From: Magallana gigas
Taxonomy: Eukaryota
Reading direction: 5' to 3'
Assembly (NCBI RefSeq): GCF_963853765.1
Contig: NC_088857.1
Coordinates: 42,346,001-42,410,000, forward strand
DNA: 64,000 nt
Part shown: one piece after another, positions 9,176-47,800 of the stretch
Layout: each line of letters starts with the position of its first letter
Position numbering within the stretch: position 1 is the stretch's first letter
The notes under the pieces: generated by a model
The model's database searches: none
Told to the model about the DNA's origin: nothing
Seen by the model: the letters and a program-made list of their open reading frames with translations, nothing else
Program-made: the position numbers and the translations under genes

Positions 9176-9180
9176 CGAGG

Positions 9181-9225
<45 letters not shown>

Positions 9226-24782: not shown

Positions 24783-27582
24783 ATGAGCATGGTTGTCGCA
24801 TGGATACTTTTATTTTACATCATTGTTTATTATTTCAAAACATATGTACTAGTAGTTTTATTTAAAACATATTCGAACGATGTTCTTGAAACTATAATAC
24901 CTCTTATTCATTATAATCAATATATCCTTATTATAAAATGAATTCAGAAATTCTAAAGTTAATTTTGTTTAACTAAAAAATAACTTAAGCCAAATTGAAA
25001 AAAAAAATTAAGTAAACTAATTCTAAATTTGTCTTTTCACTTCTTAATTTTAACAAGCTCCCCGATGTGTTTGTTTAACTTAAAAATAACATGAAACACA
25101 TTGGAAAAAAAATAAGTAAACTAATTTTAAATTTGTCTGTTCACTTCTTAAGTTTAACAAGCCCTCTAATGTGTTTTTAAATAATCGCACGAATGTATTA
25201 ATGATGATCTAAGTGAACAGGATGTTCTATTTCTTTAAGAAGATTGTTAATCATTTGCTATCATTTATAATTAATTTAATCTGACTTTTTTTTTTATAAA
25301 GATACAGTTTACGAATTGCTTTTTTATTTAAGAATGTGTACAGAGTTCTTATTAATATTCTTAAATTCAATATCAAACATTCAAGAGACAGTGCATTGAT
25401 AACAAGCGAAAGACTTTTAAAAACATTAAATTGTCTTAGATTCCTTTTTAGAACAGGTAAATACAACCGCTAATAATCTGCGAACATATGTCATATAACT
25501 TGAGTTTTCTCTCCTAGCACGTGCTTTACTTATACATGTATCATTAATTTGTGTTTTGTTGTGTATATGTGTGTGGGTGTCGATTGATCTTATCTTTTCA
25601 ATTTATTTTTATATCGTTTGAATTTAGTTCGCATTTAGTTTAAGTCTCCAATAATTATCATCAAGTTCGTCTGTCTGTTCATCAACCATCACTTCGGAGC
25701 ACCTTGTCTCTTTTATACATATGTACGTGTAGCTTGGCCCATTTTGGCTTAAGCCTCTCTTTATAAATTTTCATAAGTAAAAGATGTGCAGTGATCTTGA
25801 ATCACTTGTCATGGTCAAAGTTCAAGGTCTAATAACATCTTTATATGAAATCCTTCTAAAATGCAAATATTTTCTGCTCTTTGGTCAACTTTTACCAAAA
25901 GAGAGCTTACGTGAAAGGATTGTGCAATGATTATGAACAAAGTTCATTTTTTTTTCACATTCATCCTATCTAGCTCAATAACTACCAAAAGAGTGTTCCT
26001 GGGTAAAGGAGTGTCTAGTGGCCTGGAACCGGCTTTCTGGGTCAGACGTCAAGGGCATATGGACCTCTGTGTAAAATCCCAGCATATTGCCCAATCCTTG
26101 CATGACACAGTCAGAATCACATTTTACCCAGGGAGTGTTCGAGTGAATATATTGTGTAGTAACCTTGAACCAACTTTTCATGGTCAGGGGTTAAGGACGT
26201 ATCAGGTCATCTTTGTGTAAAATCATATGCCATAAAATTCCCTTTGTCATGTGGCTAAAAGCGTCTTTGTTTAAAGCCCACGTGTATTTTCTTTCTTTTT
26301 AAATTATGGTTCAGATTTCTACCAACATGTGCCTGTGAATGAGATAGGGCCGGTGCAGTGACCTTCAACTACTTGTATGTTGTTTAGGTCGATCTCAGCC
26401 ACTCTACAATTCTCATTCGTCTAAATGTTTTTTATAAAACATGGTCTTTTGAGATGTCTATCTTCTCATTGTTAATGATATTTAAATCTTCACTTTATAT
26501 AGAAGGAGAGATTAGTGTATATGTATCTAGTATAATTTCGTTATCTTGGAGGGTTAAGTAGTCCTGCGCCTAGAGTAGCTTCAAAAGAGGGTTTTTTTTA
26601 GTGAGGCGTGTTCGTCGTGTGTTTATTTTATAAAGCAAAGATGTATTCTGAAATGTAAAAAAGTCATCTATAATGTTTCAGGATCGGTTGCAATGGTAAC
26701 CACTCCGAACGGAAACCAATGTTTTACTTGTTCATTCACCGTGAACAAGCCATGGATGAAGACGGAATGTGTGAACAATACGGAACAAATATCTATCCAC
26801 GACGACTCCCGACCCTGCAAAAACTACTGCTACACAGAGGATCGCTTCAATATACGTAAGACGACATACTTTATTTTTCTTTGATATATATATAGTTGGT
26901 ATTTACGCATTTCAATTTTATGGGGAATCAGGTTTTGTTGGGGGGGGGGGGTATCTAAATCATAGAATATTCGAAGACATTTGAAAATTTTCTGGGGTCA
27001 TTTTTTACGAATTTTGTAAAAAAAAAAATTAAAAAAAATACCGGTATTTCAGAAGTATGTAAAAAGGTTTTTGGCCTTTAATATTAATAAACAATCATAT
27101 CAAAAATTAAATAATTTATCTTACAATTTGTAGTGGGTTTTTTTATTAATCACCTTTCACACTGTACTCTACACTCGGTCGCACTTAATGAACTAAATCG
27201 TATTTTAGAACAAATGAACTTGTTAAAAGGTATTTTAAAAAAAGCTGAATGCTTTTCTTGCCGTTTTCGTTTTATTTGTTAGCTCCATTTATTTTATTTT
27301 GTTTTATTCTTTTTAAAATATCCAAATATAAATATGAAGTATATTTACTTCAATTCATAACAACTCAAGAAGTATAGTTTTCTCCGTATTACCCATGTAG
27401 AATTTATTAAAGATCTGTTTCGTCATGAGCCACTATCCATGTCACTTCAGGCACAAAACAAGTAGATTCAGTATTTCGGTCCTGCATGCCGAGACTATCC
27501 CAAAAATGGATGTTCCGAAAATTACGGGTTTGTCACGTGCACGTATTCCTGCATGGGCAGCTTATGTAACAACATCTCTGTG
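24783..27582 (+). pseudogene. Ly6-B1 pseudogene (paralogue of Ly6-A1)
   Basis: The exon 1 donor is deleted, a 4-bp ATGC insertion at 27486-27489 frameshifts exon 3, and a ~328-bp deletion (A coordinates 17619-17946) removes the GPI tail and stop. Exon 26682-26855 is still open. Confidence 0.88.
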
Positions 27583-27793
27583 TAATGTTTAATTTGTATT
27601 AATGAGATAAGACGGGAAAACCACTTCACAGACTAACTACGGTCCGTCGAAACACCCAAAAAGGCGTGGGCCTCCGATTTTCGTGATAAGGGAAGATGTC
27701 TCATTCAGTACAAATTCTAGTTACCGAACCATCTAGCGATTTCAAGCTTAAACTGCATTTATCGACATCCGGAAGCCCCGTATTCTGCTTGCA

Positions 27794-28073
27794 ATGGAGT
27801 CGAAAAGAAACATGAAAACCTCTGTCTTTTTGGTTTTTTCATCATTACTAGTACAAGGTAACTTAATCATATTATCAAAATATTATTTATTGATATTTTC
27901 CAAATTTTAAATATGATTTTAAGATTTTCAAACATGAAGACATAAAGTTAATAGATATTCTAAAATGTTGATTACATGTACATTTCATATACCGGGTATA
28001 TTGCTTTTTAAATATCATAAGTATCGTGCTCAAAGTTTGGAGTGTATGGTAAGCGATTAAACAAACATTATTT

Positions 28074-28124
<51 letters not shown>

Positions 28125-28694
28125 CGAGGACATTTTTATTTCAGTTGCTTGGTCCAATCATGTCCGATACTTTACCTGCCTGTCATGTGCCGGAATTGAT
28201 TTCACACAGGAAAAGGACTTCCAATGTTTGAATGACCCGGCATCCATTACGACTTTCATTCATTGCAATAGTACCTGGTCTTGTTCGCACCGCAAACAAA
28301 TCAATGAGAGTATGTATTCCATGTTTAAATAAATACTCAGTATACCGTCCGTCAAAAATATTAAGATTCAAGGCACAAAAATTTCAATTCCAAATATTTA
28401 GGATTTGGTTTTTTAGGGGATTTTTTGGATTTTTTTTTTTTTTTTACAGAAACTGGAAAGATCAACTCTGTCTTGCGCGGTTGTGAACCTCAACTAGTTA
28501 CGGGCGACTGCATATACTCCAATCCAAACAACGACTGTTTCAAGTTTTGCTACTCGGAAAATTGCAATAACGAGATAAACCCTTGGCTTCACGATAACCC
28601 TTGGCTTCACGATAACCATAATGGCTGTTCCTACAATGTCGCCTCCGGGTTTTTGGCGGTGGCTGTTCCATTAATTATCTTCTTTACTCCATAA
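27794..28694 (+). CDS. Ly6/uPAR GPI-type protein, locus Ly6-B2 (intact paralogue of A2, 157 aa)
   Basis: Exons 27794-27857, 28145-28309 and 28450-28694; all Cys retained; 18-nt in-frame duplication (PWLHDN twice). Confidence 0.87.
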
Positions 28695-29352
28695 CATAAA
28701 TGGATATTAAGCTGCAGATTCTTTGTTCTAATTGTGTCATGAAATGTGTTTTGCTGTATTTCATTGCTTAAAGCATACAGTTACTTTATAATAAAAGTAA
28801 ACCTATACTTTATTGAAAGGAGTCACATTCACATGCGTCCGCTGCATTCATACAAAGACACTCATGTTCATTTATTACGCCACTTTTGCCAACCATGTCG
28901 CTTCCTCTATTTTGTTACTGATGACTTGAAGCTTGATAATGTATTTTTCTAGCCTTTTATACTGTTCTTCGTTCAGAATGTTCTTAACTGCCATCTGTGA
29001 AGAAAATATGTTGTTTTAGAGTATAGAGAGTGTTTTTTTTCTTTTCATTTTAACATGTCTCAAACTTTTTGGTCAGTGGTTTAATCGATTATCGAACTAT
29101 CGTAATTTCGATTCCTGTATCTCTGTCATACATGATATTTTCCCCCCGAAAACGAGTTATTTTATTTCAATCGACAATGAAAATTGATATTCATTACAAT
29201 AACAACCAATAAGATCGTTTTGAGTAAATTAAACACTTTCCAGATAATCTTCATACATTGTAATGTTTGATGCATGTGTTGTTTATAATCTAGTTCAGTG
29301 TTAATGTAAATTTTCAACATACATTCAACGTTCACAAATGCTTTATAGTTAC

Positions 29353-31594
29353 CAATTGCATTTCTTCTTCCGATATGACTCTGAAAATATATATCACATT
29401 TTGCACAGTCTCAAGCTCATGCAACTTTCCCACTAAGATGCTGAAATGTAAAAATAAAATTAATCATAGTAAAACACATTTTAAAACTAATCTTCCTTCA
29501 ATTTGCACTCGAGTTTTTAATTAAGCTTGTATCACCTCTGGTATTTGGAAGATTTTCGACTGAGAACATTTAGATCCTCCGGTACATCCTCATCGCTGTC
29601 CATGGCACTGTCTAGACAGTCATACAGATTGCAATACGAGTTAAAACGAATTAATAGATTTGGGTTTTTTAACAATGCCCTCTTGCTTAAATCCTACACT
29701 GTATATTTTAATGTTAATAATTCTATTGATATTACTGTATTCAAGGAAATATTTGCTCCCGTTTTATTTTCATCTCTTTTGCCCTCGTTGTCAGCGGGCG
29801 AATTTAAAACTGGACGAAATCCAATGTCTCAAACAATCTGTCTTAACACAACTTTGTCTGGACGAATTCTAAACGGGGCGAAACCGCTTGTCAGTTAAAA
29901 GGACGAAAATAACACGGGCGGAAATAACCCTGTATACAGTATATTGAATATCTACAGATCTATGTATCTTATTTTATATCTATAATCATATAATGAAAGT
30001 TTAAGATGTTTTTTGTCATATGTAGAATTGCGTACCCTCGTCTGTCGATTTAACCAAGGCTGACAGTTGTCTCTGAAAACGAAGAGTTGTTTCCGGCGAA
30101 GATAGAGTCTTAAAGAAGAAGCGCATAAATCAGAAGTAAAATGTGCTCTCTAATCACCTTAAACTCCAATACTTTCTCTTAAAAATCTATAAACTAAAAT
30201 CAAACCTCGGACCAATCCTCTATAAGTAGCGGCTCATTATCATCATCGCCATCATCACCACCACCATCATCATCATCATCCTTATCATCACCATTCCAAT
30301 TGGTAAGAAACCCAACCTTATCCTTGAAGATGTGACCTGCTTTTATGGATGATTGCAGAGATTATAAAGTGAATTTGATAAGAACAACGTTTTATTCACA
30401 TTCATGATAACTTACTCAGACTTTACAGTTTCGTGTATTACGTACCCTCATCCGTCGATTTAACCACCAAAGCTGACATTTGACTTTCATTACGAGTTGT
30501 TTCCGTCAAAGATAGAGTCTTAAAGAAAAACCGTATAAATCAGAATTAAAATGTGCTCTCTATATGGGTTACACTCTATTACTTTCTCTTAAAAAATCTA
30601 TCAACTAAAATCAAACCTCTGACAAATCTTCTACAAGTTGCTGCTCGATATCATCATCATCGCCATCGCCATCATCATCATCACCACCACCATCCTTGAA
30701 GATGCGACCTGCTTTTATGAATGATAGCAGTCATTATAAAGTGAATTTGATACGGACGAAGTTTTATACAGTATCATCTGGTATATGATAACTTACTCAG
30801 ACTTTGCAGTTTGTTTAAAACAGTGTTTAGTTTTAAAACCTCGTCTTTGATTGCGCCGTACTTTTTAGGATATTTCGTCTTTACTCTCTCCTATATAAGT
30901 TAGTTAGAATTAGAATAATTATTTCAGGGATCATCAAGAAAAATCATGGTTCTCATAAAATTGAATTCTTTTACTCCGTAACTCCTTAATAAGTTTTATC
31001 ATTTTATTGTAATGAGGAAAACATGCAATGTTTTCAATTCAAATTTTAAACAAATACTATTTAGCCACAAGATTGGTCTACGTGTCAGGAATATATTCGG
31101 ACTCACCATTCGTGCCCTTTTGCTAACATCTCGCGTTGATAATATGCATCGTATATCAACGACGTATTCTACTTTTCCTAGTTTTCTCGTCAGTTTCCTG
31201 ATGAAAAGAAGTTGAATAATTAAAGTTTTATTATAGCTATCATTTATTCTTCGAGATTACTGGTTACATGAACGTTAAACGCTAACAATATTACCAATTT
31301 AAATTGAAATGATAGTAAACTTACGAAAGTATACTTGATGTGTCGGATTCCAATTCTCTAATCAGTGACTCCTTGCTCGATACATCTCTCTGCATATTGC
31401 CATTTGAATCCTACAGTGTCGGTTATATGGGTTTATTCAATATCTAAGGCGCATATGATACTAAGGAAATGTACACATTAAATAGCAGAAAAAAGGAATG
31501 ACAAAAAAGGAAAGTCGTAAATAGCGCGGGCAAAATATTAATGAAATATCTTAAATGTATACAGTATGTGCTCATCCTCTAACTTTACTACACG

Positions 31595-31662
<68 letters not shown>

Positions 31663-34600
31663 TAAATACGTATACAACACTATTCACATATTTACACTGT
31701 CTGAGGAGGTGGATTCCTCGGACTGACTGCCCGGCTGTTCAAGACCCGGATGTTCGAAGTGTTGCTGCGGTTCTTCCTCTCTGACATACAGACACTCTGA
31801 ATTCATATTTTCGCTTTTGCCTTGGATAAAGAACATTTCTAATCTTAACACAAGCTCGTCATTTTCATTGCTCTACGGATCATTTAGGTAATTACAGACA
31901 TTACCTTCTGACATAAGCTCCAGCAAAAAGTTTCCTTGGAACAATAATCCATTTTCCTCATTAAAAGCTTCATATTCAATTTTTGCGTTCCTTCTTTCAT
32001 CTATAAAATAGAACACAAATTATCAATACAACTTGTCCTTCAATAAAAGTCATAAAAATTAGGGATTTAAAAATCTTGCATTGCTCAATAATTTGTGTTA
32101 CTGCTATACCTTTGCTAACTTGGAGTGTGTCCATTTTATTTAAAAGTCTTTTAATGTCCATTCCAATTGAGTTTTCAAGGGCGACAAGAAAAATCCTGAC
32201 GGCTTCATCTCCTCTATGTAAAACCATCCGAACAAAATGTAAGTTTTCTGTTCGAACACTCTCGCTGCTCATGTGTAGCGAGTCGAGCTCCTCGTAAGAC
32301 ATGATCCCAGCACTCACGAAAGGGGTCTGAAGGGCTGCGACACTCATCACATCTAATATCTCCGGCAAATTGTCCAGGATATTGCTCTTGATGTGTTCGA
32401 TGTCTGAAAATATTGCTTCAAATTACGTTACAACGAAAATTGTTCCATATACATGTAATTAAAAGGCCTGCATGCATTGACACCATTGACGACGATTAGG
32501 GGTAAGTATAAGTGAAACATAGCATTTTCCATGGATAAATAATACATATAGAGACGATATAGAGTTTACATTGTATGTATGCAGAAAATTCATTGTCTTT
32601 TATGTTGTCAGATTTCTCAGTTGGTACTTCTTTACTACTTTTACTTTAATTAATACTCACCTAAATCTTGGAATTTTTCCACGTTTGGAAACAGTTTATC
32701 ATAAACATATCTGTTTTTCTCTTTCAGTCTGTCTAGTACAAGTTCAATCGTTTCTTCGGACTCCTTTTTTAGATGTTCCAACAACAACTTTACTTTGTCC
32801 GTCCTGGTTTTCCTGTTTTCTATGTCCGCCTTTACAGAACTAAAGATATGTCCCATCTCTGTGTCCCGTACCAAACATCCTGGTTCTAGCTCTTCCAATA
32901 AAAAGCTTTCACATCGGTCCAAACGGGCTTTGTGCCTCGTGTCAGACTCTTTCTTTGGTTGAAATGCAGTTGGCTTGGAACCTCAAAATGAAGATTAAGT
33001 TACATGATAAATAATGAAGATGTCATTCTTACAGAAAATTATCCACCGTTTCATGAATGGGTATCAATGATTCTATACAGTTAGAAATTATTATGCAATG
33101 TATTGTATATTTTAAAATTTTATTAAATTGACATGTACATGTTTGCATTATATGTGTACCTTCAGTAGCATTCTTAACTTTGATTTCAATTTGTATTTTG
33201 TATTTATCCTTTGTCAAAAGTTTCCGAACGCCCTTCGTCTTGAACAAACTTTCTAAGAATGTGGAAATGTCTCCACTTTCTATGAAATGTCTCAATTTTT
33301 CCTTTGCGTCGCTGGATTCTGTGCGTAGCCAGATTGTAATGGACCCCTCCGACAAACGATCAATGGTTGAGTGTATTCCTTGCATAATCTTGTCTTCTGA
33401 TTCTGGAATTTCTTGTTTCAGAGCTCTGTATACTCTTAAGCTTTCACTGCCGTCAACATGTGTGATTCTCAATTCCACTGATTTAACAGTAGAGCTGGAG
33501 GCTGACATATTAAATATAACTTGTGGTGCAACAAATTTTCTGGTAAATGATATTCTTTTTTCGCTAGAAATATTTCTTATACTAGCCCTTAGGTAAGGGT
33601 ACTAAAATATTGATTAACTTTAATTTGGCAACACAATTATACATATGTACATACCAAGGCCAAAAAAATGATTCCAAAATGAATAAAACATATTTTTGAA
33701 ATGATATTTTAATCAGTATTTAACTGTATGGAAAATAAGGTTGCAACTACCTTCGGTAGGGAGGAACATCCATCCGTTCACCATTTCAACTGTTAGTGGT
33801 CTTTCATTGTCTGGAGATGAGAAACACAGGTTAATGGTTTAGTTCCAAAACGGAGATAAAATATCAAAACAGAATTTCAAAGTTTTTGAAAGTCGGGCTA
33901 CATTATCTTAGTATGAATTAATCATGTATACAACCTGCAGTATCGCCCTCCGCCGGTACATCTTGCTGAAGGCTCTCAGCAAGATCATCTAATTCATGGA
34001 ATTTCAAAATGGAGAGCAGTTTTCTTGAAAAGGACCCGGGTCTGTTTTTCTCACTATATTTCAGAATCTTTTTCGCCGCTTCATCTTTGTTTGTAATGCG
34101 TGATATTTCCTCATGCTCGTCTACAGAAATAAGATCCTCTTGGAGGAAATCGTCCAAAATGCTGTTGGAACTCAAAACATTAATGCGTTTTCTAATTTCT
34201 GTCAATAACTTTTCTCGATGTTTCCCGTGTTGCTTCAGATTGTAATGTAGACGTGTGTTTGAGGAATCTAAGCCTAAAAAATGAAATAAAGGCTTTAAAG
34301 GGATTAAATTAAAAGGCTTTTTCAAGACAGTCTAAGAGTCGTAAAATACTAGTAATTTGTGATGATAGTGCATTTTGATTTACCATCATTTGAACTTTCC
34401 ATTGCATATGCAGCGGAACATAACAGGTGCCCAAAACTGCAGCATTCATCAGCTATTATATTTTTCATCATTTTGATAAATTTCTCTGGATCTGGATTCT
34501 TTATCAATTTACGTAAAATGATATCACACTTCCTTGCTCGGCATTCTTTCAGAAGGTGGGTGTTTTCATCAGTGTCAAGAATTTCATACTGAACAAGATA

Positions 34601-35977
34601 ATCAAGGATCTCGTTTGGTTCCATTTCCTCTTTAAGTTTTTTATAGTTTTTTCTAATACATGTATGATGTGTTTCCAAGGCAACCAAGCTGTCTGGATAG
34701 CCACTGTCTTGTCTGTCGTAAGGGGGTTCGGTCATAACAGAAGCCGTGTCAGTTGTCTGTAAGGAATGATTCTAAATTTTATTAAAGGAGCATGGTCACG
34801 ATTTTGGTCATTTTTTTTTTTTTTTTATTATTTACAATGCTTTAAAAATGCATTTATAATGATCAAATTAAATTTAAGAGTCTTTCGTAGAGTTATAAGC
34901 AATATACAGGGCTCACAATTCTCTAACATGTAAACAAGGCTCGTACCTTGTTTTTGTTTACATAAGTTCAATATACCAGTGAAAAAAAAATTCCAGCTTA
35001 TTTGTCAATCTTTTTATTTATTTTAAGCATAGATAAACAGTTGCTAACGTTTAACACATTCGTTTTAGGTTTAAAACTGAAACCTTTACTTCAACGTTCA
35101 AAATGTAAACAAACGCTTTGTTAACATAGCGAAGAATTTCAAGCTCTATAACTTGCTTATAACTCAACAAATGACACTCAAAATTCGGTTCCCTATTAAA
35201 AATGCCTTTCTGAAGCATTGTAAATATTTAAAAAATCGGAAAAATAATTTTTGACCAAAATCGTGACCATGCCCTTTAAACGGGAAGACATTATTAACAC
35301 ATGTATTAATAAATCTATTCAATGAACTAGTATATTCTTGTTTGAGTTTGTAGAACTTTTTAATCGAATTTACAGGATTTTAACAAAAATGTGTAACTGG
35401 GGCGATTCTTGAGTAGGTTGGCCAATCGTTAACTTACGATTTTGTGCTGTTTTTAAAATAGCTAGTAGCATAAGGATCTAATATTATTCTGTATTCTGTA
35501 AAGCAATTGTGGCCAGCTTGAATCATTTCGCACTAGTAACAGCTAAGCAATGTTGAATTCTGTCGTAATATGGTATGTACATGAGAATTTTGTCAGTCTA
35601 CATGACGCGTCATACCCGATGAATCTACACGGTAAGATTTAAAAAAAAAATTTAAGACTACAGAATAAATTCAAAGGAGATTTAAAATCATATACATTTG
35701 TAGTTCGGCATTCTCTGCTTGGTCCGTATATTTGACTTTAATTGTATTATGTATTGAGAAACTGTTACTCTACAAGAAAAGCATTGATCAGAATTGTTTT
35801 GGATTCAGCAACAGTTCACAATATGCACATGCAGATATTAACCTTATTTTGACTATTTATGGAAATAAGAGAATATCTTACCTCTATACATAACATTTTG
35901 TCAACTTTCTGTTCACCGATGTCAAATGTTCCTCCAGAAATCTGTTTGTCCTCATTTTCTTACCTTCCTGGTGAATC
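29353..35977 (-). CDS. Large non-catalytic death-fold protein: CARD-CARD-(TRADD-N-like)-CARD-CARD plus acidic tail, at least ~940 aa
   Basis: Phase-compatible open exon chain: 34756-34384 (CARD1), 34273-33935 (CARD2), 33810-33782 (donor uncertain), 33601-33160, 32981-32661 (CARD3), 32403-32110 (CARD4), 32000-31905, 31820-31696, 31410-31325, 31197-31107, 30890-30797, 30708-30617, 30518-30446, 30336-30206, 30108-30036, 29611-29536, 29440-29353. An upstream exon is likely at about 35977-35881. CARD-like pattern e.g. IRKNYKKLKEEMEPNEILDYLVQYEIL. The true start and final exon are not resolved. Confidence 0.75.
29735..29939. mobile_element. TA-flanked Tc1/mariner-type MITE (copy in unit B)
   Basis: TA|CTGTA ... 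TACAG|TA. Confidence 0.7.
31597..31659. repeat. (AG)n microsatellite (others at 18799-18852, 23522-23541, 28075-28122)
   Basis: Direct observation. Confidence 0.95.
34786..35275. mobile_element. Complete Kolobok-like MITE, 490 bp
   Basis: TTAA|AGGAGCATGGTCACGATTTTGGTCA ... TGACCAAAATCGTGACCATGCCCT|TTAA. Confidence 0.9.
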
Positions 35978-36179
35978 TAATTCAGTGACAAGACATTTAA
36001 TGGACCAGTCAATCATGTTATAGACATGGAATATATCAAGAGCTAACTTTGAATCCGTGCCAAACTTTATTGATTTTAACGAAATAGTTCCGTTCTGATT
36101 GATTTGCAGGTGTTTGGTGTAAACAAATGCATGTTAAATGTCTTCATCATTCTGTTGTTTCAGGAAGGGACGTCACATG

Positions 36180-37074
36180 CAGTGGCGTCGGAAGCAAATT
36201 GAAAGTGTGTGTGTGGGGGGGGGGGGGGCTGACTAATCCTCAGAGATCTTTATCAATAAAAAAAAATCCCAAAATCATGACAATCCTAATCCGTGGTGGT
36301 GGTGGTGGGGGGGGGGGGGGTTACCTATGGTTCCAAAGAAATTTTTCTTACCGATCAAAATTCCCCCCCCCCCCCCCCCAAATCATGATATACCTAATCC
36401 GGATTTACAGTCAAGTCGTACACAGACCAACTCGTATACAGGTCAACTCGTATACAAAAATTTCCGCATAAAAAAAATAAAAGTAAACTAGTATACAAAA
36501 AATTCCGCATATAAAATAGGTATGCTAAACCGAAAGTCAACTCGTATACAAAAAATTCCCGTATACTTTCTATGATAAGATTTTCATCAATTTTAGTAAA
36601 TAACCCCATACCTACAATAGAGTAGGACTTGTGTTACTATAGAGTCAACAAAATAATGAGGAGTATCTTAATTTGCCTTTAAGAAGTCATCCGTTTGGAG
36701 AAGCAAGAAACATCGCGCTTGTTGTTTTAACAATTATTGTTTTTATGCGGAAATTTTGTATACGAGTTGACCTGTATACGAGTTGGTCTGTGTACGACTT
36801 GACCGGACACCCTAATGAGTGCTATTTCGTGGGGGGAGGGGGGCGGGGGGGGGGCAGTTTACCCATGACTCCAACTTCTCATTATTTCCATCTTTTCTAC
36901 GTAAATTTAGGAACAATTATCTTTGCTCCAAGAAAAAGTGGGGGGGGGGGGGGGGGGGGGCTGAACCCTCTCTGATGCTATGTGCCTAATGGTTAGGTCT
37001 AACTTTGCAAAAAAAAGTAGAAGGGGGGGGGCTAAGTCCCCCTAGCACCCTCACCCCCTGTTCCGACGCCTATG
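36180..37074. mobile_element. G/C-homopolymer-rich MITE hosting a nested element
   Basis: CAGTGGCGTCGGAA ... TTCCGACGCCTATG (12/14 complementary); ACATG on both flanks. Confidence 0.6.
36410..36803. mobile_element. MITE with ~65-bp TIRs built from aactcgtatac subrepeats, nested in 36180-37074
   Basis: gtcaagtcgtacacagaccaactcgtatacaggtcaactcgtatacaaaa is mirrored at about 36740-36803. Confidence 0.8.
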
Positions 37075-37479
37075 ACATGACAAATCCTGGAGGGGGCAAT
37101 GGCTGTTTGCATAATCATGGTTACATTTCGTCCCTATAAAATGCTTTGTTTTACGTTTTTACAAAATTTCTTATTAAAAACAAATATGTGATCGGCACGT
37201 TGTTTTACAGCAGATAATCTAACTCAAACTCCGTATGCTTAAAATATAAAAAAAGGAATTATGTAATTACATGTATGTAGGGAAAGGGTGCTTGTTGTTT
37301 TAAAATTGAAACACTTTTTCTGCAAGTTAAAGTTATTGTTATGTTTCAATTACTCTGCAGTCATCCTGTACAGTAATTACAAATAGTTTTCCTTTCAGGC
37401 TGATAAAATTCAAAGCTTTAAGTCTTGTTTATCGTAAGATTTAGTGACGTGCAAAATTAGTAAACAAGTTGTATGTGCA

Positions 37480-39025
37480 GCGATTCCTCTAGATTACAAA
37501 TCAAATGATCCCCCTAGGTGTCCACTATGTCACAAACACGGCGTCCATCGATTCCTTTATGTTTAATACATAGTGGGTGTTCTATGACTCCGCTATGTTT
37601 CCGGTAAACTAGGGTACATACACTTTTCCAAAGATTTAACAAGGTTACAGACCCTGTATTAATACATGTTATTCCGCCAGGTTACAGATTCAACGGCGAA
37701 CGGATTCCACTATAGCTTAATTCTCGGTGTGCACTTATTTCGATCGGTTACAAACTCTGGGTCTTATGATTCTGCTAGGTTACAAACTTTGTGTCTAATG
37801 ATACTTTTATGTTACAGACTAGTCGGTGCCTAATGTTTATGCTAGGTTACATCAGAGACATAAATAACATGTTATTTATGTCTCTGGTTACATAGTTGAT
37901 GTACAATGATTTTACTTTGGTACAGACTGTCCTGTGATTCCGCTAGGTTACATACATGTACATCAATAAAATGATTTTATTAGCTTCCGGATTGGTGTAC
38001 AATTATTCAGGTAGGTTACATTACCCCCTTGTTACATTTACGGTGTGCAATGATTTATAATAGACTGATAGACTCTGTGTCTAATGATTCTGCTTAGTTA
38101 CAGACTCAATATCCAATGATTCAGCTAGGTTACGATCTTAATTAATGTCAAATGATCCCACAAAGTTACATACATTTGTCCAATGATTTAACTAGGTTAC
38201 AGATTTGGTATCGAATACTTCCGCTAGCCTACAGACTCAGTTTCCAATGATTGCACTAGGCTACAGACGCAAAAGGTGTTGTTATGTTAATACTCTGTTT
38301 CCAATGATTCAACTAGGTTACAGACTTGATGTCCAATAATGCAGGTTACAAACTCAATGCATGAGTATTTCACCTCTCATTAGCTACGATTTTGCAATGT
38401 TATTGTGTCCAACGACTGCACTAGCTTACAGAATTGACGTCCAAAGATTTTGCAAATTCAGCAGTGCATACATTTGTCCAATGACTCTACTAAGGTACAG
38501 AATTGCTGTACAATTATTCAGAAACGTAACAAACTCTGTGTCCAATGATACTCTCTTAGTTACAGGCTCAGTATCTTATGATTCCACTAGGTTACAGACA
38601 CAATGTCTAATGATACCCCTAGGTTACAGACACAATGTCTAATGATTCCACTAGGTTACAGACACAATGTCTAATGATTCCACTAGGTTACAGACACAAT
38701 GTCTAATGAATCCACTAGGTTACAGACACAATGTCTAATGATTCCACTAGGTTACAGACACAATGTCTAATGATTCCACTAGGTTTCAGACACAATGTCT
38801 AATGATTCCACTAGGTTACAGACACAATGTCTAATGATACCCCTAGGTTACAGACACAATGTCTAATGATACCCCTAGGTTACAGACACAATGTCTAATG
38901 ATACCCCTAGGTTACAGACACAATGTCTAATGATTCCACTAGGTTTCAGACACAATGTCTAATGATTCCACTAGGTTACAGACACAATGTCTAATGATTC
39001 CACTAGGTTACAGACAATGTCTAAT
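37480..39025. repeat. 32-bp satellite (gattccactaggttacagacacaatgtctaat): 14 near-perfect units at 38580-39025 preceded by ~1.1 kb of degenerate units; second copy 44087-44532
   Basis: Period 32 measured directly (38644, 38676, 38708...); no unique spacers. Confidence 0.95.
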
Positions 39026-39391
39026 TATTCTGCTTAGCTACATATTTGGTGTTCAATGCTTTTGCAAGGTTTTGGAAACTGAGAAATCATGATAAACAAC
39101 AAACGACATGGTCTTTATATTTTTTCTTTTAATAAATATAGCATCTAATGACTAGATATTACCAAGAATTTTTACTCTCTAAGTTGTCAAAGATACAATC
39201 ATTTTCCAGGTTTCATTGACTGCACATCTGAACTTATCATAATTTCAATGGAATGTTTATAATTCATCACAAACAGACTTGAATGATTTGCTGATATTGC
39301 CATTCACTAGTAATGGTGCATCCGGACTCCGAGTAAATACACTACACATATATACATATATTAACCACAGTTACTCTACAGCTCTCAATCC

Positions 39392-40681
39392 TCATCTCAT
39401 GTCCTCAGCAGAAAACATGCCCTACAAAGAAACCACCAGAAATTGATTTATACATGTAATGTTCTTGCATTATGATCTTATTATTAACTTGACTGCTCAA
39501 GTCACTGTCACATTTAAGGCAAATTGATAAATATTAAATAAATATGGAATCGATGTACTATATTGCCCCAGTAAACTGTATGGTACATAATCGAGTATAC
39601 TAAGTCTATTTTATATACATGTATATTAAAATTGTCATACTGTATATAATTCACTTTTGACATATCTATAGCAACTCTTAACTACTTGGAATTATAATCA
39701 CATATTCTTACATACAAAGAACTACATATTTTGATAAGCACAAATAAAGGTGGGAGTACACATTTGACCGAGAGTTTTACCTTGGCACGTCGTAGAATGG
39801 AATCTTTACTAGAATCGTATGGTGAATCTTTGCTGGGGATTTCTAGTACAGCTGGGATTGGCTGATCATGGGAATCAATAACATACCTGATTTCTTCTGC
39901 AATCTAAAGAGACGATAACTCATGACATTGCTAAGCATGCTACTGGTGTTACATATTATATAGATTTTGAATAAATCATTCTAATCCTGTAAAACTGCAA
40001 CTGATGAATACACATCAATCTCCTATGGAAGTGAAATTTTGCATGGCGGAAATCATATATAGCAAAGATCATTAATAATATTCAGTTTATTGACATCTAC
40101 AAGCAAACTATACAACAGTACATACTGTCTGATTAATCAGAATAATGGCAATGTCGTCTCTCTTCAGAAATCCTCGGAAAGCTTCCTCAATGTCATGTCT
40201 GCTGGTATCTAAAGAACAAAATCAACGGCTTTTAGACTGATATCTGTTATATTTGACTGATTATAAATTATGAAAGAGCATAAAATAAATACATGAAGGA
40301 ATAGAAACCAATTAATATTAAACACTCCTTTAGTAGTAAATGGAATAAGTATTTTAAATTTATAACATTTATTTCAATTTCAGATCAGTATCTCATTATA
40401 AAAGTCACATCCGAATGTGAACTTTTATAACTATACATGTATAATGGATTTCTACTACATGTACTATCTGCTAACAATTTTTAACTTTTACAATTTTTAA
40501 ATATTAAATATTTTTAAGGATATCTAATATGCAGGTTTATTTATCTGAATGGTAAATAGAGACTTCGTGAATTTGAATGGTTAACTTCACTGTTCTTACT
40601 TTTGTCGACAACAAGGAAATTTGGTTCTCTCTTTTTGTTCAATTCACCTATACCTCCTAATAAGAAACCTGTACAAGTGTC
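39392..40681 (-). pseudogene. ATP6V1F: Duplicate of ATP6V1F exons 2-5 without exon 1
   Basis: Exons 40681-40600, 40208-40126, 39903-39781 and 39421-39392 match the upstream copy; no start exon lies inside the duplicated unit. Confidence 0.85.
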
Positions 40682-40865
40682 CTGAAAAAAAAATCACAGA
40701 CCTGTACAATATTTGACTTAATAAATCAACATTTTAATTATCATTAATATGACTTTTTTATGATAACACTGCATAGTTCTGCCACAACTTATATCAAGAT
40801 TATATATTGACCAATTTACAGGTACATGTAGAAGTCGACTTGTCTAATATCTATATCAACTTTTC

Positions 40866-40960
40866 CGATTATGGCTCAGTTGGCAGAACATCTCACTAGA
40901 GATTCAGGGGGCCAGGTTTCAATCCTGGTCTGGTCCTTCATTATTTCTCCTGCCCCGCTA
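40866..40960 (+). mobile_element. Short tRNA-derived SINE-like fragment (second copy 46373-46467)
   Basis: TGGCTCAGTTGG (A box) and GGTTTCAATCC (B box), without a convincing acceptor stem. Confidence 0.6.
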
Positions 40961-41034
40961 TATATGATTATGAATGAGTTGACTTATCAACTAAAAATGT
41001 GAATTTGGTAAATCTGTATATGGTCCTTTTCATA

Positions 41035-41286
41035 TAGAACCATTTTAACAAGAGCTTGGCCTTTGGTAGTTGTGTCAAACAGCAATGTGATGTAGGCCTG
41101 TCTATTTCATTGCTAGCCACTCAGCCATGGCTCTTTCAAATCAACAAGATTTGTCTGGCTTTCGAGCTAAGACTATGCAATCAGTGCATATTTCATTTGA
41201 AACAGCATCATTTTTAACTTGTTTTGACGCAAGGAATAGATAGCTACGCCCCACTGGAAGTCCAAGGTCTTGTTAAAATGGTTCTA
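41035..41286. mobile_element. TA-ended MITE with ~25-bp TIRs (second copy at +5507)
   Basis: tagaaccattttaacaagagcttgg ... ccaaggtcttgttaaaatggttcta. Confidence 0.75.
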
Positions 41287-41308
41287 ATTATAACACCTTA
41301 CAATAAAA

Positions 41309-42264
41309 CTAGACTTTGACCCGTGCGTGCACGGGTTGACATTGCATAACGAACATTTAGAAATAGGTACATCGATACACCTTATTATTGACATTTACAT
41401 AACAAAGCTATAAGCCTACAATAATGCTATTAATTTCACTACACTTTCCTTAGTTTGAATAACCTAACTGTGTCTCGGGAAAAGCCCCTCCCTTACTTAT
41501 ACCCGTAAAGTAGCAGAAAATTGCAGAATCGCTCTGGAACGATTTTGGAGAAAGTTAATGAATGATGTTGCCTTGAAAATAACAGTCAAATACATCACAA
41601 CAAACCTTTTTGAGACTGCAAATACCTTTCAACTAAAAATTTTAATCCATAGAATGGTAGAACTCAACACCTTTTCACCAACGTACACGTAATCGTATAT
41701 TCTTTGTAAAACTGGGTCTGTAGGACATTATTCATTTTTACGATAAAACACATTCTATCATCTCTCTCCTAACAAATATAATGTAACATTTTTGCATGTA
41801 ATCAAATATTTTTTGTCATCACGAAGATGAAAGTAAGTGCTTAGTTGAAATGTATATTTGTTATTTTATACTTTCTCTAATAAGAAATCATTAATTTATA
41901 TGAACAAAATATATAGCAAAAGTCCAATGAAAATTTACCCGTATTTGTATTATCATTTCTGAGTTTATTCAGGCAGATGTGATATTGTGGAAACAAATAT
42001 AAACTAAAGATCCCGTTAGTGTGAATGTATTGCGCAAGTGCAAGATTGTAAAATCCAAAAAATCCAGGTGATTTCCGGGATTTTTTGAGGAATTTTCGTT
42101 GATTATTAATTAGCGAAGCTTAACTGAGAAAAAATAAAAACAAATTGGTAATCTTCAAGTACCAAAGATGTTTAAAATATATAAAACAAAAGACAGTATT
42201 CTTCCGATTTCTCGGTATTAAAGACTAAAAATTCGAGTCTATTATTTTAATATAGTAGTATAGA
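41309..42264 (-). mobile_element. Non-autonomous Helitron, 956 bp
   Basis: On the minus strand: A|TC 5' end, subterminal hairpin CCCGTGCACGCACGGG, 3' end CTAG|T; no TSD. Confidence 0.85.
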
Positions 42265-44898
42265 TATGCAGACTTGTACAAAGCTTGTTAGATTCTTATG
42301 TCTACATAAATCTGACTTATGTTAACTAGAGTGCTATTTCGTGGGGGGAGGGGGGCGGGGGGGGGGGCAGTTTACCCATGACTCCAACTTCTCATTATTT
42401 CCATCTTTTCTACGTAAATTTAGGAACAATTATCTTTGCTCCAAGAAAAAGTGGGGGGGGGGGGGGGGGCTGAACCCTCTCTGATGCTATGTGCCTAATG
42501 GTTAGGTCTAACTTTGCAAAAAAAAGTAGGGGGGGGGGCTAAGTCCCCCTAGCACCCTCACCCCCTGTTCCGACGCCTATGACATGACAAATCCTGGAGG
42601 GGGCAATGGCTGTTTGCATAATCATGGTTACATTTCGTCCCTATAAAATGCTTTGTTTTACGTTTTTACAAAATTTCTTATTAAAAACAAATATGTGATC
42701 GGCACGTTGTTTTACAGCAGATAATCTAACTCAAACTCCGTATGCTTAAAATATAAAAAAAGGAATTATGTAATTACATGTATGTAGGGAAAGGGTGCTT
42801 GTTGTTTTAAAATTGAAACACTTTTTCTGCAAGTTAAAGTTATTGTTATGTTTCAATTACTCTGCAGTCATCCTGTACAGTAATTACAAATAGTTTTCCT
42901 TTCAGGCTGATAAAATTCAAAGCTTTAAGTCTTGTTTATCGTAAGATTTAGTGACGTGCAAAATTAGTAAACAAGTTGTATGTGCAGCGATTCCTCTAGA
43001 TTACAAATCAAATGATCCCCCTAGGTGTCCACTATGTCACAAACACGGCGTCCATCGATTCCTTTATGTTTAATACATAGTGGGTGTTCTATGACTCCGC
43101 TATGTTTCCGGTAAACTAGGGTACATACACTTTTCCAAAGATTTAACAAGGTTACAGACCCTGTATTAATACATGTTATTCCGCCAGGTTACAGATTCAA
43201 CGGCGAACGGATTCCACTATAGCTTAATTCTCGGTGTGCACTTATTTCGATCGGTTACAAACTCTGGGTCTTATGATTCTGCTAGGTTACAAACTTTGTG
43301 TCTAATGATACTTTTATGTTACAGACTAGTCGGTGCCTAATGTTTATGCTAGGTTACATCAGAGACATAAATAACATGTTATTTATGTCTCTGGTTACAT
43401 AGTTGATGTACAATGATTTTACTTTGGTACAGACTGTCCTGTGATTCCGCTAGGTTACATACATGTACATCAATAAAATGATTTTATTAGCTTCCGGATT
43501 GGTGTACAATTATTCAGGTAGGTTACATTACCCCCTTGTTACATTTACGGTGTGCAATGATTTATAATAGACTGATAGACTCTGTGTCTAATGATTCTGC
43601 TTAGTTACAGACTCAATATCCAATGATTCAGCTAGGTTACGATCTTAATTAATGTCAAATGATCCCACAAAGTTACATACATTTGTCCAATGATTTAACT
43701 AGGTTACAGATTTGGTATCGAATACTTCCGCTAGCCTACAGACTCAGTTTCCAATGATTGCACTAGGCTACAGACGCAAAAGGTGTTGTTATGTTAATAC
43801 TCTGTTTCCAATGATTCAACTAGGTTACAGACTTGATGTCCAATAATGCAGGTTACAAACTCAATGCATGAGTATTTCACCTCTCATTAGCTACGATTTT
43901 GCAATGTTATTGTGTCCAACGACTGCACTAGCTTACAGAATTGACGTCCAAAGATTTTGCAAATTCAGCAGTGCATACATTTGTCCAATGACTCTACTAA
44001 GGTACAGAATTGCTGTACAATTATTCAGAAACGTAACAAACTCTGTGTCCAATGATACTCTCTTAGTTACAGGCTCAGTATCTTATGATTCCACTAGGTT
44101 ACAGACACAATGTCTAATGATACCCCTAGGTTACAGACACAATGTCTAATGATTCCACTAGGTTACAGACACAATGTCTAATGATTCCACTAGGTTACAG
44201 ACACAATGTCTAATGAATCCACTAGGTTACAGACACAATGTCTAATGATTCCACTAGGTTACAGACACAATGTCTAATGATTCCACTAGGTTTCAGACAC
44301 AATGTCTAATGATTCCACTAGGTTACAGACACAATGTCTAATGATACCCCTAGGTTACAGACACAATGTCTAATGATACCCCTAGGTTACAGACACAATG
44401 TCTAATGATACCCCTAGGTTACAGACACAATGTCTAATGATTCCACTAGGTTTCAGACACAATGTCTAATGATTCCACTAGGTTACAGACACAATGTCTA
44501 ATGATTCCACTAGGTTACAGACAATGTCTAATTATTCTGCTTAGCTACATATTTGGTGTTCAATGCTTTTGCAAGGTTTTGGAAACTGAGAAATCATGAT
44601 AAACAACAAACGACATGGTCTTTATATTTTTTCTTTTAATAAATATAGCATCTAATGACTAGATATTACCAAGAATTTTTACTCTCTAAGTTGTCAAAGA
44701 TACAATCATTTTCCAGGTTTCATTGACTGCACATCTGAACTTATCATAATTTCAATGGAATGTTTATAATTCATCACAAACAGACTTGAATGATTTGCTG
44801 ATATTGCCATTCACTAGTAATGGTGCATCCGGACTCCGAGTAAATACACTACACATATATACATATATTAACCACAGTTACTCTACAGCTCTCAATCC

Positions 44899-47800
44899 TC
44901 ATCTCATGTCCTCAGCAGAAAACATGCCCTACAAAGAAACCACCAGAAATTGATTTATACATGTAATGTTCTTGCATTATGATCTTATTATTAACTTGAC
45001 TGCTCAAGTCACTGTCACATTTAAGGCAAATTGATAAATATTAAATAAATATGGAATCGATGTACTATATTGCCCCAGTAAACTGTATGGTACATAATCG
45101 AGTATACTAAGTCTATTTTATATACATGTATATTAAAATTGTCATACTGTATATAATTCACTTTTGACATATCTATAGCAACTCTTAACTACTTGGAATT
45201 ATAATCACATATTCTTACATACAAAGAACTACATATTTTGATAAGCACAAATAAAGGTGGGAGTACACATTTGACCGAGAGTTTTACCTTGGCACGTCGT
45301 AGAATGGAATCTTTACTAGAATCGTATGGTGAATCTTTGCTGGGGATTTCTAGTACAGCTGGGATTGGCTGATCATGGGAATCAATAACATACCTGATTT
45401 CTTCTGCAATCTAAAGAGACGATAACTCATGACATTGCTAAGCATGCTACTGGTGTTACATATTATATAGATTTTGAATAAATCATTCTAATCCTGTAAA
45501 ACTGCAACTGATGAATACACATCAATCTCCTATGGAAGTGAAATTTTGCATGGCGGAAATCATATATAGCAAAGATCATTAATAATATTCAGTTTATTGA
45601 CATCTACAAGCAAACTATACAACAGTACATACTGTCTGATTAATCAGAATAATGGCAATGTCGTCTCTCTTCAGAAATCCTCGGAAAGCTTCCTCAATGT
45701 CATGTCTGCTGGTATCTAAAGAACAAAATCAACGGCTTTTAGACTGATATCTGTTATATTTGACTGATTATAAATTATGAAAGAGCATAAAATAAATACA
45801 TGAAGGAATAGAAACCAATTAATATTAAACACTCCTTTAGTAGTAAATGGAATAAGTATTTTAAATTTATAACATTTATTTCAATTTCAGATCAGTATCT
45901 CATTATAAAAGTCACATCCGAATGTGAACTTTTATAACTATACATGTATAATGGATTTCTACTACATGTACTATCTGCTAACAATTTTTAACTTTTACAA
46001 TTTTTAAATATTAAATATTTTTAAGGATATCTAATATGCAGGTTTATTTATCTGAATGGTAAATAGAGACTTCGTGAATTTGAATGGTTAACTTCACTGT
46101 TCTTACTTTTGTCGACAACAAGGAAATTTGGTTCTCTCTTTTTGTTCAATTCACCTATACCTCCTAATAAGAAACCTGTACAAGTGTCCTGAAAAAAAAA
46201 TCACAGACCTGTACAATATTTGACTTAATAAATCAACATTTTAATTATCATTAATATGACTTTTTTATGATAACACTGCATAGTTCTGCCACAACTTATA
46301 TCAAGATTATATATTGACCAATTTACAGGTACATGTAGAAGTCGACTTGTCTAATATCTATATCAACTTTTCCGATTATGGCTCAGTTGGCAGAACATCT
46401 CACTAGAGATTCAGGGGGCCAGGTTTCAATCCTGGTCTGGTCCTTCATTATTTCTCCTGCCCCGCTATATATGATTATGAATGAGTTGACTTATCAACTA
46501 AAAATGTGAATTTGGTAAATCTGTATATGGTCCTTTTCATATAGAACCATTTTAACAAGAGCTTGGCCTTTGGTAGTTGTGTCAAACAGCAATGTGATGT
46601 AGGCCTGTCTATTTCATTGCTAGCCACTCAGCCATGGCTCTTTCAAATCAACAAGATTTGTCTGGCTTTCGAGCTAAGACTATGCAATCAGTGCATATTT
46701 CATTTGAAACAGCATCATTTTTAACTTGTTTTGACGCAAGGAATAGATAGCTACGCCCCACTGGAAGTCCAAGGTCTTGTTAAAATGGTTCTAATTATAA
46801 CACCTTACAATAAAACTAGACTTTGACCCGTGCGTGCACGGGTTGACATTGCATAACGAACATTTAGAAATAGGTACATCGATACACCTTATTATTGACA
46901 TTTACATAACAAAGCTATAAGCCTACAATAATGCTATTAATTTCACTACACTTTCCTTAGTTTGAATAACCTAACTGTGTCTCGGGAAAAGCCCCTCCCT
47001 TACTTATACCCGTAAAGTAGCAGAAAATTGCAGAATCGCTCTGGAACGATTTTGGAGAAAGTTAATGAATGATGTTGCCTTGAAAATAACAGTCAAATAC
47101 ATCACAACAAACCTTTTTGAGACTGCAAATACCTTTCAACTAAAAATTTTAATCCATAGAATGGTAGAACTCAACACCTTTTCACCAACGTACACGTAAT
47201 CGTATATTCTTTGTAAAACTGGGTCTGTAGGACATTATTCATTTTTACGATAAAACACATTCTATCATCTCTCTCCTAACAAATATAATGTAACATTTTT
47301 GCATGTAATCAAATATTTTTTGTCATCACGAAGATGAAAGTAAGTGCTTAGTTGAAATGTATATTTGTTATTTTATACTTTCTCTAATAAGAAATCATTA
47401 ATTTATATGAACAAAATATATAGCAAAAGTCCAATGAAAATTTACCCGTATTTGTATTATCATTTCTGAGTTTATTCAGGCAGATGTGATATTGTGGAAA
47501 CAAATATAAACTAAAGATCCCGTTAGTGTGAATGTATTGCGCAAGTGCAAGATTGTAAAATCCAAAAAATCCAGGTGATTTCCGGGATTTTTTGAGGAAT
47601 TTTCGTTGATTATTAATTAGCGAAGCTTAACTGAGAAAAAATAAAAACAAATTGGTAATCTTCAAGTACCAAAGATGTTTAAAATATATAAAACAAAAGA
47701 CAGTATTCTTCTGATTTCTCGGTATTAAAGACTAAAAATTCGAGTCTATTATTTTAATATAGTAGTATAGATATGCAGACTTGTACAAAGCTTGTTAGAT

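What the first reader, a model, noticed from the sequence alone, without database searches (positions are those of the whole stretch)
29353..35977. Four-CARD protein built around a TRADD-N-like domain: candidate undescribed immune signalling scaffold
Seen: four CARD-like blocks, each on its own exon ending in phase 1, arranged 2+2 around a ~145-aa exon (33601-33160) reading ...IDRLSEGSITIWLRTESSDAKEKLRHFIESGDISTFLESLF.... There is no protease, NACHT, kinase or helicase motif in the recovered chain. Established: CARDs mediate homotypic filament/adaptor assembly, and TRADD-N-like domains recruit partners in death-domain signalling. Inference: the GSIxIxL..S..A.E.L...I.SG.I..FL pattern resembles invertebrate TRADD-N-like domains. 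A CARD2-TRADD-N-CARD2 scaffold could bridge two different CARD partners to a TRAF/MATH-type effector. I do not recognise this architecture from a named gene.
Basis: partly seen in the sequence, partly recalled or inferred. Interest (0 to 1): 0.75.

Follow-up and report, generated by a model that had tools for sequence, protein, structure and literature searches.

The report
Oyster four-CARD adaptor with TRADD-N core
This is a real, expressed Pacific-oyster gene for a non-enzymatic docking protein (two CARD domains, a small TRADD-N-type domain, two more CARD-type domains, then an acidic tail), but the same layout was already listed for its eastern-oyster counterpart in a 2021 paper, so it is an unstudied member of a known kind and not an undescribed system.

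Summary
The locus is Magallana (Crassostrea) gigas LOC105323171 on the minus strand. It has 19 coding exons (35896 to 28875) and encodes 963-968 aa. RNA-seq contigs and reads show every GT..AG junction, so it is one spliced gene and not a pseudogene or two genes.

Each of the four death-fold blocks and the middle domain sits on its own phase 1-1 exon. CARD4 and CARD2 are confirmed CARDs. CARD1 and CARD3 are divergent: Pfam CARD is their top hit, but below threshold.

The true exon is 33501-33160, preceded by a real 60-nt mini-exon at 33810-33751.

The TRADD-N reading is supported by several weak lines:
- a predicted beta-alpha-beta-beta-alpha-beta fold (low confidence);
- an invariant Gly and a near-invariant Ser (Cys in one member) at the beta2-beta3 turn, the superfamily hallmark;
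- Kaur et al. [quoted passage not shown]

Pfam TRADD models do not detect the domain, and the fold match is generic.

The architecture is therefore catalogued, not undescribed, and no functional data exist. The scan reached the same verdict for a paralogue on other DNA. New details here: the TRADD-N exon is a cassette exon, the exon plan is conserved in Saccostrea, and a promoter-less 3' duplicate lies downstream.

The parts
35882..35985 (-). First exon (5' UTR plus ATG at 35896, encoding MLCIE); the 5' end is not defined and the exon extends at least to 35985
   Evidence: RNA joint 35882|34756 in X2, X4 and X20; the X4 contig reaches 35985. The peptide matches P0001/P0033.
34384..34756 (-). 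CARD1 exon, ends in phase 1; an alternative acceptor 15 nt upstream (34771) gives the +5-aa NHSLQ isoform
   Evidence: Joints at 34756 and 34384|34273. Pfam CARD E=0.0017 on the exon; 7 of 9 homologues hit CARD. The model shows a helical bundle of seven short helices, pLDDT about 77-86. P0033 carries the NHSLQ insert.
33935..34273 (-). CARD2 exon, phase 1-1
33751..33810 (-). 60-nt linker mini-exon, phase 1-1 (DNERPLTVEMVNGWMFLPTE)
   Evidence: Joints 33935|33810 and 33751|33501 in all four runs; exact match to P0001.
33160..33501 (-). TRADD-N-type (DEDD2-clade) domain exon, phase 1-1; a cassette exon skipped in some isoforms
   Evidence: Joints 33751|33501 and 33160|32981. Gly invariant and Ser in at least 90% of members at the beta2-beta3 turn. 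Predicted ferredoxin/RRM-like fold. The orthologue is listed as TRADDN-DEDD2. Isoforms P0041 and P0042 lack exactly this exon.
32661..32981 (-). CARD3 exon, phase 1-1 (divergent death-fold domain)
   Evidence: Joints. Pfam CARD E=0.002; 5 of 11 homologues hit CARD. Six predicted helices, pLDDT 67-87. Not structurally matched here.
32110..32403 (-). CARD4 exon, phase 1-1
28875..32000 (-). Twelve small exons encoding the 382-aa acidic, Ser-rich tail with an internal tandem repeat and a C-terminal helical segment. Exons: 32000-31905, 31820-31696, 31410-31325, 31197-31107, 30890-30797, 30708-30617, 30518-30446, 30336-30206, 30108-30036, 29611-29536, 29440-29353, 28994-28875 (stop TAA at 28877-28875)
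   Evidence: RNA joints; exon-by-exon exact peptide matches to P0033 with AG/GT edges; no Pfam family in the tail; DNA repeat 30027-30431 ~ 30437-30812.
20415..24721 (-). Promoter-less partial duplicate of the gene's 3' part (second half of CARD3 with a frameshift, CARD4, tail exons), made by a roughly 10-kb tandem duplication whose breakpoint lies inside the CARD3 exon (32851)
   Evidence: tblastn and blastn self-comparisons.

Best explanation
The locus is M. gigas LOC105323171. It is a single expressed gene for a non-catalytic death-fold adaptor with this layout: tandem CARDs, a short linker, a TRADD-N-type domain (RRM/ferredoxin-like, DEDD2 clade), two further CARD-type domains, and a long acidic tail that is probably disordered with a coiled-coil end.

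Shown here: the gene model, its expression, the domain order, the one-domain-per-exon phase 1-1 structure (conserved in Saccostrea), and an isoform that lacks only the TRADD-N exon.

Inferred from the established behaviour of these domain families: the CARDs recruit other CARD proteins (caspases, RLR/MAVS-like or BCL10-like proteins) by homotypic, filament-type assembly. [quoted passage not shown] Under this reading the protein is a hub in oyster apoptosis or innate-immune signalling, and skipping the TRADD-N exon would uncouple the CARD scaffold from that partner.
For: Gene and splicing: all junctions are GT..AG in three contig runs and one raw-read poly(A) run. Full-length 3.0-3.8-kb transcript ORFs of 963 aa occur in many runs. 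Every exon matches NCBI isoform X3 exactly.

TRADD-N: the predicted topology is beta-alpha-beta-beta-alpha-beta, with invariant G58 and S59 in at least 90% of members (Cys in P0017) at the beta2-beta3 turn. This is the 'uS' hallmark defined in PMC8195603. The motifs GS-strand, SG[DE][LI] and L[LI]T.[DE] are co-linear with DEDD2-clade rows of the published alignment. Foldseek lists TRADD-N 1f3v_A at prob 0.97. [quoted passage not shown] Synteny with V-ATPase subunit F supports orthology.

Cassette exon: P0041 and P0042. Conserved exon plan in S. cucullata.

Against: No bridging sequences to bona fide TRADD-N proteins were found. CARD1 and CARD3 are below Pfam threshold individually and were not matched structurally.

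No interaction, induction or phenotype data exist, and no paper mentions the gene.
Confidence: 0.75

Rival explanations
1. The protein is a decoy or inhibitor and not an activating scaffold. Like vertebrate CARD-only proteins (ICEBERG, INCA, ARC), its divergent CARDs would cap or sequester CARD filaments and damp caspase or NF-kB activation, while the acidic tail keeps it soluble.
For: There is no effector domain. CARD1 and CARD3 are divergent. ICEBERG and ARC appear among the CARD matches. An isoform lacks the TRADD-N domain.
Against: Paralogues carry the same five-domain module fused to effector-type domains: F-box, SAM plus AIG1 GTPase, and IIGP GTPase. That suggests the module recruits or activates and does not only block.
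Confidence: 0.2
2. The middle domain is a generic ferredoxin/ACT-like domain that is not homologous to TRADD-N (for example a small-molecule-binding or dimerisation module), and the Gly-Ser turn is convergent.
For: Pfam TRADD models fail. The top structural hits are unrelated ferredoxin-like proteins. There are weak hits to DUF1892/1n6z.
Against: The published iterative and profile-profile analysis places the orthologue's domain in the DEDD2 TRADD-N clade. Three co-linear motifs are shared with that clade. The Ser-to-Cys substitution pattern matches the superfamily. Fusion to death-fold domains is the typical TRADD-N context.
Confidence: 0.15
3. The locus is two separate genes, or a pseudogene with an unspliceable junction between CARD2 and the middle domain.
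For: Low-depth contigs retain intron 33502-33750 (records 4, 10 and 16).
Against: Spliced joints 33935|33810 and 33751|33501 are present in all four runs. Contiguous 963-aa ORFs occur on 3.0-3.8-kb transcript contigs from many runs.
Confidence: 0.02

Closest known systems
[quoted passage not shown]
   Same: Same five-domain order. 42% identity over 98% of the protein (P0047). Same upstream neighbour, V-ATPase subunit F, which is fused into some gene models in both species.
   Different: Different genus and a divergent tail. The M. gigas gene itself was not found in the stored part of that table, and the file was cut when stored. Neither gene has been studied experimentally.
Vertebrate DEDD2/FLAME-3 (DED + TRADD-N) and TRADD (TRADD-N + Death domain)
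   Same: A TRADD-N-type RRM-like domain with the conserved tiny-residue-Ser turn, joined to death-fold adaptor domains in a non-enzymatic protein.
   Different: Here the death-fold partners are four CARDs flanking the TRADD-N on both sides. Pfam TRADD models do not detect the domain. Binding to TRAF/MATH is unknown.
RIG-I/MDA5 tandem CARD (2CARD) signalling module
   Different: There is no helicase or C-terminal RNA-binding domain, so this is an analogy for how paired CARDs could nucleate partner filaments and not membership.
Oyster paralogues carrying the same module plus effector domains: C. virginica LOC111106572 (module + SAM + AIG1 GTPase), C. virginica LOC144619747 (F-box + module), S. 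cucullata LOC134271809 (IIGP GTPase)
   Same: The CARD-CARD-TRADD-N-CARD-CARD core aligns at 40-63% identity block by block.
   Different: The window gene has only an acidic low-complexity tail in place of an effector domain.

Membership tests
CARD (death-fold superfamily, Pfam PF00619) | Sequence match above Pfam's gathering score | tested here: met
   The whole protein P0001 scores 45.5 bits against a cut-off of 23.9, E=8e-12, with 2 stretches. Taken exon by exon, each block is below cut-off (18.8, 22.8, 18.4 and 14.9 bits), but CARD is the top family each time.
CARD (death-fold superfamily, Pfam PF00619) | Six-helix antiparallel bundle superposable on solved CARDs | tested here: met
TRADD-N superfamily, DEDD2 clade (Kaur et al. 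2021; Pfam PF09034 / PF20694) | RRM-like two-layer alpha+beta sandwich with a four-stranded antiparallel sheet (beta-alpha-beta-beta-alpha-beta) | tested here: met
   The AF2 model gives E13-20, H27-44, E48-55, E59-66, H69-103 (broken into three) and E106-108, but at mean pLDDT 59. Foldseek and VIA-align top hits are ferredoxin-like folds; 1f3v_A (TRADD-N) appears at E 0.02, prob 0.97, TM 0.45. The fold class fits, at low confidence, and is not specific.
TRADD-N superfamily, DEDD2 clade (Kaur et al. 2021; Pfam PF09034 / PF20694) | Conserved 'uS' motif (tiny residue, usually Gly, then Ser, occasionally Cys) in the beta2-beta3 turn | tested here: met
   G58 is invariant and S59 is present in at least 90% of 25 family members; P0017 has Gly-Cys. 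The motif sits between the predicted strands 48-55 and 59-66. The definition is quoted from the paper.
TRADD-N superfamily, DEDD2 clade (Kaur et al. 2021; Pfam PF09034 / PF20694) | Statistically significant sequence or profile match to known TRADD-N domains | tested here: not met
   Only 1 of 25 members hits PF20694, at E=0.066, and none hits PF09034. The profile against PDB sequences finds no TRADD chain. Profile searches found only oyster family members. The published analysis reports the assignment for the orthologue.
TRADD-N superfamily, DEDD2 clade (Kaur et al. 2021; Pfam PF09034 / PF20694) | Occurs fused to death-like superfamily adaptor domains | tested here: met
   The domain is flanked by CARDs on both sides. 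The paper describes this as the constant feature of the clade's lineage-specific expansions.
TRADD-N superfamily, DEDD2 clade (Kaur et al. 2021; Pfam PF09034 / PF20694) | Binds a partner (TRAF MATH domain in TRADD) through the exposed sheet and the conserved Ser | not testable with these tools
   No complex prediction or binding assay is available.
RIG-I-like receptors (2CARD + helicase) | DExD/H helicase and C-terminal RNA-binding domain after the tandem CARDs | tested here: not met
   Pfam finds only CARD in the 963-aa product and nothing in the tail.

The most novel reading that the evidence does not exclude
The TRADD-N domain is encoded by a symmetrical phase 1-1 cassette exon. Its inclusion or skipping could act as a splicing-controlled switch that couples or uncouples a four-CARD filament hub from a TRAF/MATH-type or other partner. 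The strict one-domain-per-exon phase 1-1 plan, conserved between Magallana and Saccostrea, could be the engine of the oyster-specific diversification of this module (3+3 CARDs, F-box, AIG1 and IIGP GTPase fusions). That would make exon shuffling and tandem duplication the mechanism, instead of or alongside the retrotransposition route proposed in the literature.
Probability: 0.2. Interest if true: 0.55.

Novelty: new member of a known kind. Interest (0 to 1): 0.3.

Why it matters
Oysters lack adaptive immunity and have greatly expanded death-fold, TRAF, IAP and GTPase families, yet almost none of the lineage-specific adaptors has a known partner. This gene is a clean, well-expressed, effector-free representative of the CARD-CARD-TRADD-N-CARD-CARD module, with a natural isoform that lacks TRADD-N. 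That makes it a convenient entry point for testing what invertebrate TRADD-N domains bind and whether paired CARDs nucleate filaments in molluscs. It does not change any concept: the layout is already catalogued.

Tried and rejected
- Pfam and NCBIfam scans of the middle exon gave nothing above noise.
- phmmer and profile searches of the middle domain against PDB sequences gave only a weak DUF1892/1n6z hit.
- hhalign between the four CARD-block profiles and the middle-domain profile had no power. Neff was about 2, and even the two confirmed CARDs did not match each other.
- Profile searches for bridging relatives outside oysters found none.
- Look-ups of C. virginica loci for P0047, P0048 and P0050 found nothing on record.
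- Literature searches for the gene and protein identifiers found nothing.
- The two-gene and pseudogene idea was rejected on the RNA joints.
- Hits of the middle domain to two bacterial Fn3-repeat proteins (P0016, P0020) were set aside as summed weak strand matches. The domain is clearly alpha+beta, not an Fn3 sandwich.

Full report
**What is there**

The window is AT-rich animal DNA. RNA and DNA runs that hold the stretch are labelled oyster.

I laid three transcript-contig runs and one raw-read poly(A) run on 29990-35985. This gave canonical GT..AG joints (CT..AC on the plus strand) at 35882|34756, 34384|34273, 33935|33810, 33751|33501, 33160|32981, 32661|32403, 32110|32000 and 31905|31820, followed by a chain of small 3' exons.

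A phmmer search of the middle exon against 1.84 billion representatives returned a 963-aa protein, P0001, at 99% identity. P0001 is the ORF of 3.0-3.8-kb transcript contigs found in many runs. The word search named the gene as Magallana/Crassostrea gigas LOC105323171, annotated 'uncharacterized protein' or 'CARD domain-containing protein', with isoforms X1-X7.

I checked the model exon by exon against P0033 (NCBI isoform X3). Every exon peptide is an exact substring with AG/GT edges, giving 19 coding exons from the ATG at 35896 to the TAA at 28877-28875.

Whole-protein work used database proteins returned by the tools, and exon work used window references.

**Check of the observation**

CARD2, the linker mini-exon, the middle domain, CARD3, CARD4 and the first tail exon are all symmetrical 1-1 exons.

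Two corrections are needed:
- The middle exon starts at 33501, not 33601. An acceptor at 33601 would meet a stop in the required phase.
- The stretch at 33810 is a separate 60-nt mini-exon (33810-33751) that is spliced on both sides.

**The death-fold blocks**

- On the whole protein, Pfam CARD passes its gathering score (45.5 bits against 23.9). On single exons, CARD is always the top family but is below threshold (E from 9e-5 to 0.03).
- A 600-residue AF2 model built with 13 homologues gives four helical bundles at pLDDT roughly 67-91.
- Profiles of CARD2 and CARD4 hit PDB CARD chains, almost exclusively so for CARD4.
- CARD1 and CARD3 are divergent. Their profiles find no clear PDB CARD. 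However, 7 of 9 and 5 of 11 homologues respectively hit Pfam CARD at E down to 1e-3, with single hits to DED, bDLD1 and a DEATH-like family.

I treat CARD1 and CARD3 as death-fold domains, probably CARDs, that were not confirmed structurally here.

**The middle domain**

No Pfam, NCBIfam or PDB sequence match is significant. Homologues are confined to oysters (Magallana, Crassostrea, Saccostrea) and to single-exon fragments.

An alignment of 25 members shows invariant E41, G58, L64 and L75, and near-invariant H49, S59, E67, K74, F78, I79 and L88. The AF2 model is low confidence (pLDDT 59) but gives a beta-alpha-beta-beta-alpha-beta order, with the Gly-Ser pair exactly between strands 2 and 3.

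The literature supplies the most informative evidence. Kaur, Iyer, Burroughs and Aravind (eLife 2021, PMC8195603) define the TRADD-N superfamily as an RRM-like sandwich with a strongly conserved 'uS' motif in the beta2-beta3 turn, where Ser is occasionally Cys. In TRADD this is Ser67, which contacts the TRAF2 MATH domain. The oyster family has exactly this motif, including one Gly-Cys member.

Their tree alignment shows, for the DEDD2-like clade, the same co-linear pattern as the oyster domain: GS plus an alternating hydrophobic strand, then a helix ending in SG[DE][LI], then L[LI]T.[DE].

[quoted passage not shown] It lists LOC111106572 as 'CARD x3 + TRADDN-DEDD2 + CARD x3 + SAM + GTPase-AIG'.

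These two proteins are P0047 and P0050 in my searches. They align block by block with the window protein. The V-ATPase subunit F gene lies just upstream of the window gene (45285-48464, minus strand), so the synteny behind the fused models is conserved.

That step is left out. On balance I put the TRADD-N assignment at about 0.8.

**Other features**

- The tail (582-963) is rich in Glu, Asp, Ser and Leu. It has a tandem repeat of an acidic Gly/Asp run followed by ...IED[LW]SETL...SALVVKSTDE, and a helical C-terminus. It has no Pfam family.
- Isoforms P0041 (transcript ORF) and P0042 (NCBI X7) lack exactly the 342-nt TRADD-N exon and stay in frame.
- The same exon plan, one domain per phase 1-1 exon, is present in Saccostrea cucullata LOC134279403.
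- Paralogues attach the five-domain module to an F-box, to SAM plus an AIG1 GTPase, or to an IIGP GTPase.

**Mechanism**

Shown: a spliced, expressed, non-enzymatic multi-death-fold protein with a central TRADD-N-type domain.

Inferred: CARD-CARD homotypic recruitment, by analogy with Apaf-1/caspase-9 and RIG-I 2CARD/MAVS assemblies. TRADD-N would act as a docking surface or conformational switch, by analogy with TRADD-TRAF2 and the model of Kaur et al.. Exon skipping would be a way to uncouple the two functions.

A decoy role like that of CARD-only proteins is the main functional rival. No binding, induction or phenotype data exist, and the gene identifiers appear in no searchable paper.

**Novelty and verdict**

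The layout is in a published catalogue for the orthologue, and the gene is annotated.

I file it as a new member of a known kind, of modest interest. The small additions here are the cassette TRADD-N exon, the conserved 1-1 exon modularity, and a promoter-less 3' duplicate created by a roughly 10-kb tandem duplication whose breakpoint lies inside the CARD3 exon.

Noticed in passing
window 14748-24716 versus 24711-32851: A tandem duplication of roughly 10 kb at 88-92% identity. One breakpoint lies inside the CARD3 exon (32851). The downstream unit carries a promoter-less copy of the gene's 3' part (half of CARD3 with a frameshift at 24721-24481, CARD4 at 24277-23987 with 92% aa identity, and tail exons down to 20415). 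It also carries a second copy of a plus-strand Cys-rich small gene (15807-20233 versus 25915-28691). Whether the partial copy is transcribed was not tested.
   Followed up: partly
window 36817-42330 versus 42329-47837: A 5.5-kb tandem duplication at 99.9% identity. It duplicates exons 2-4 of the V-ATPase subunit F gene (45285-48464, minus strand; copy at 39778-40684). It is either very recent or an assembly artefact. A roughly 32-bp-period tandem array lies inside it at about 38540-39030 and 44046-44537.
   Followed up: partly
window 34778-35279 (intron 1 of the CARD gene) and 23062-23523: A high-copy interspersed repeat with internal inverted symmetry. RNA contig depth is 2700-3900 there against about 100 over the exons, with many loose ends at 35232 and 35274. 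It is probably a MITE-like element transcribed from many loci.
   Followed up: no
window 7777-9240, minus strand: A 488-aa stop-free segment with a reverse transcriptase domain (RVT_1, E=4e-24), that is, a retrotransposon remnant.
   Followed up: partly
window 49138-50561 (plus strand) and 53704-62665 (minus strand): Neighbouring genes: a transmembrane protein with a ubiquitin-like domain (PF00240, E=6e-7), and a large gene with bromodomain and WSD/DDT-associated motifs (BAZ-like chromatin factor).
   Followed up: partly
P0016 and P0020 (metagenome proteins), hits to middle-domain residues 12-68: phmmer of the middle domain also matched two bacterial Fn3- and DUF5018-repeat proteins (E 6.5e-7 and 1.9e-4, four stretches each). 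This is unexplained. It is probably a sum of weak beta-strand matches over repeats and not homology.
   Followed up: no
window 33502-33750 and 32982-33159: Lower-depth transcript contigs retain the introns on either side of the TRADD-N exon (records 2, 4, 8, 10, 14 and 16). This is consistent with slow or regulated splicing around the cassette exon, or with pre-mRNA or DNA in the libraries.
   Followed up: no
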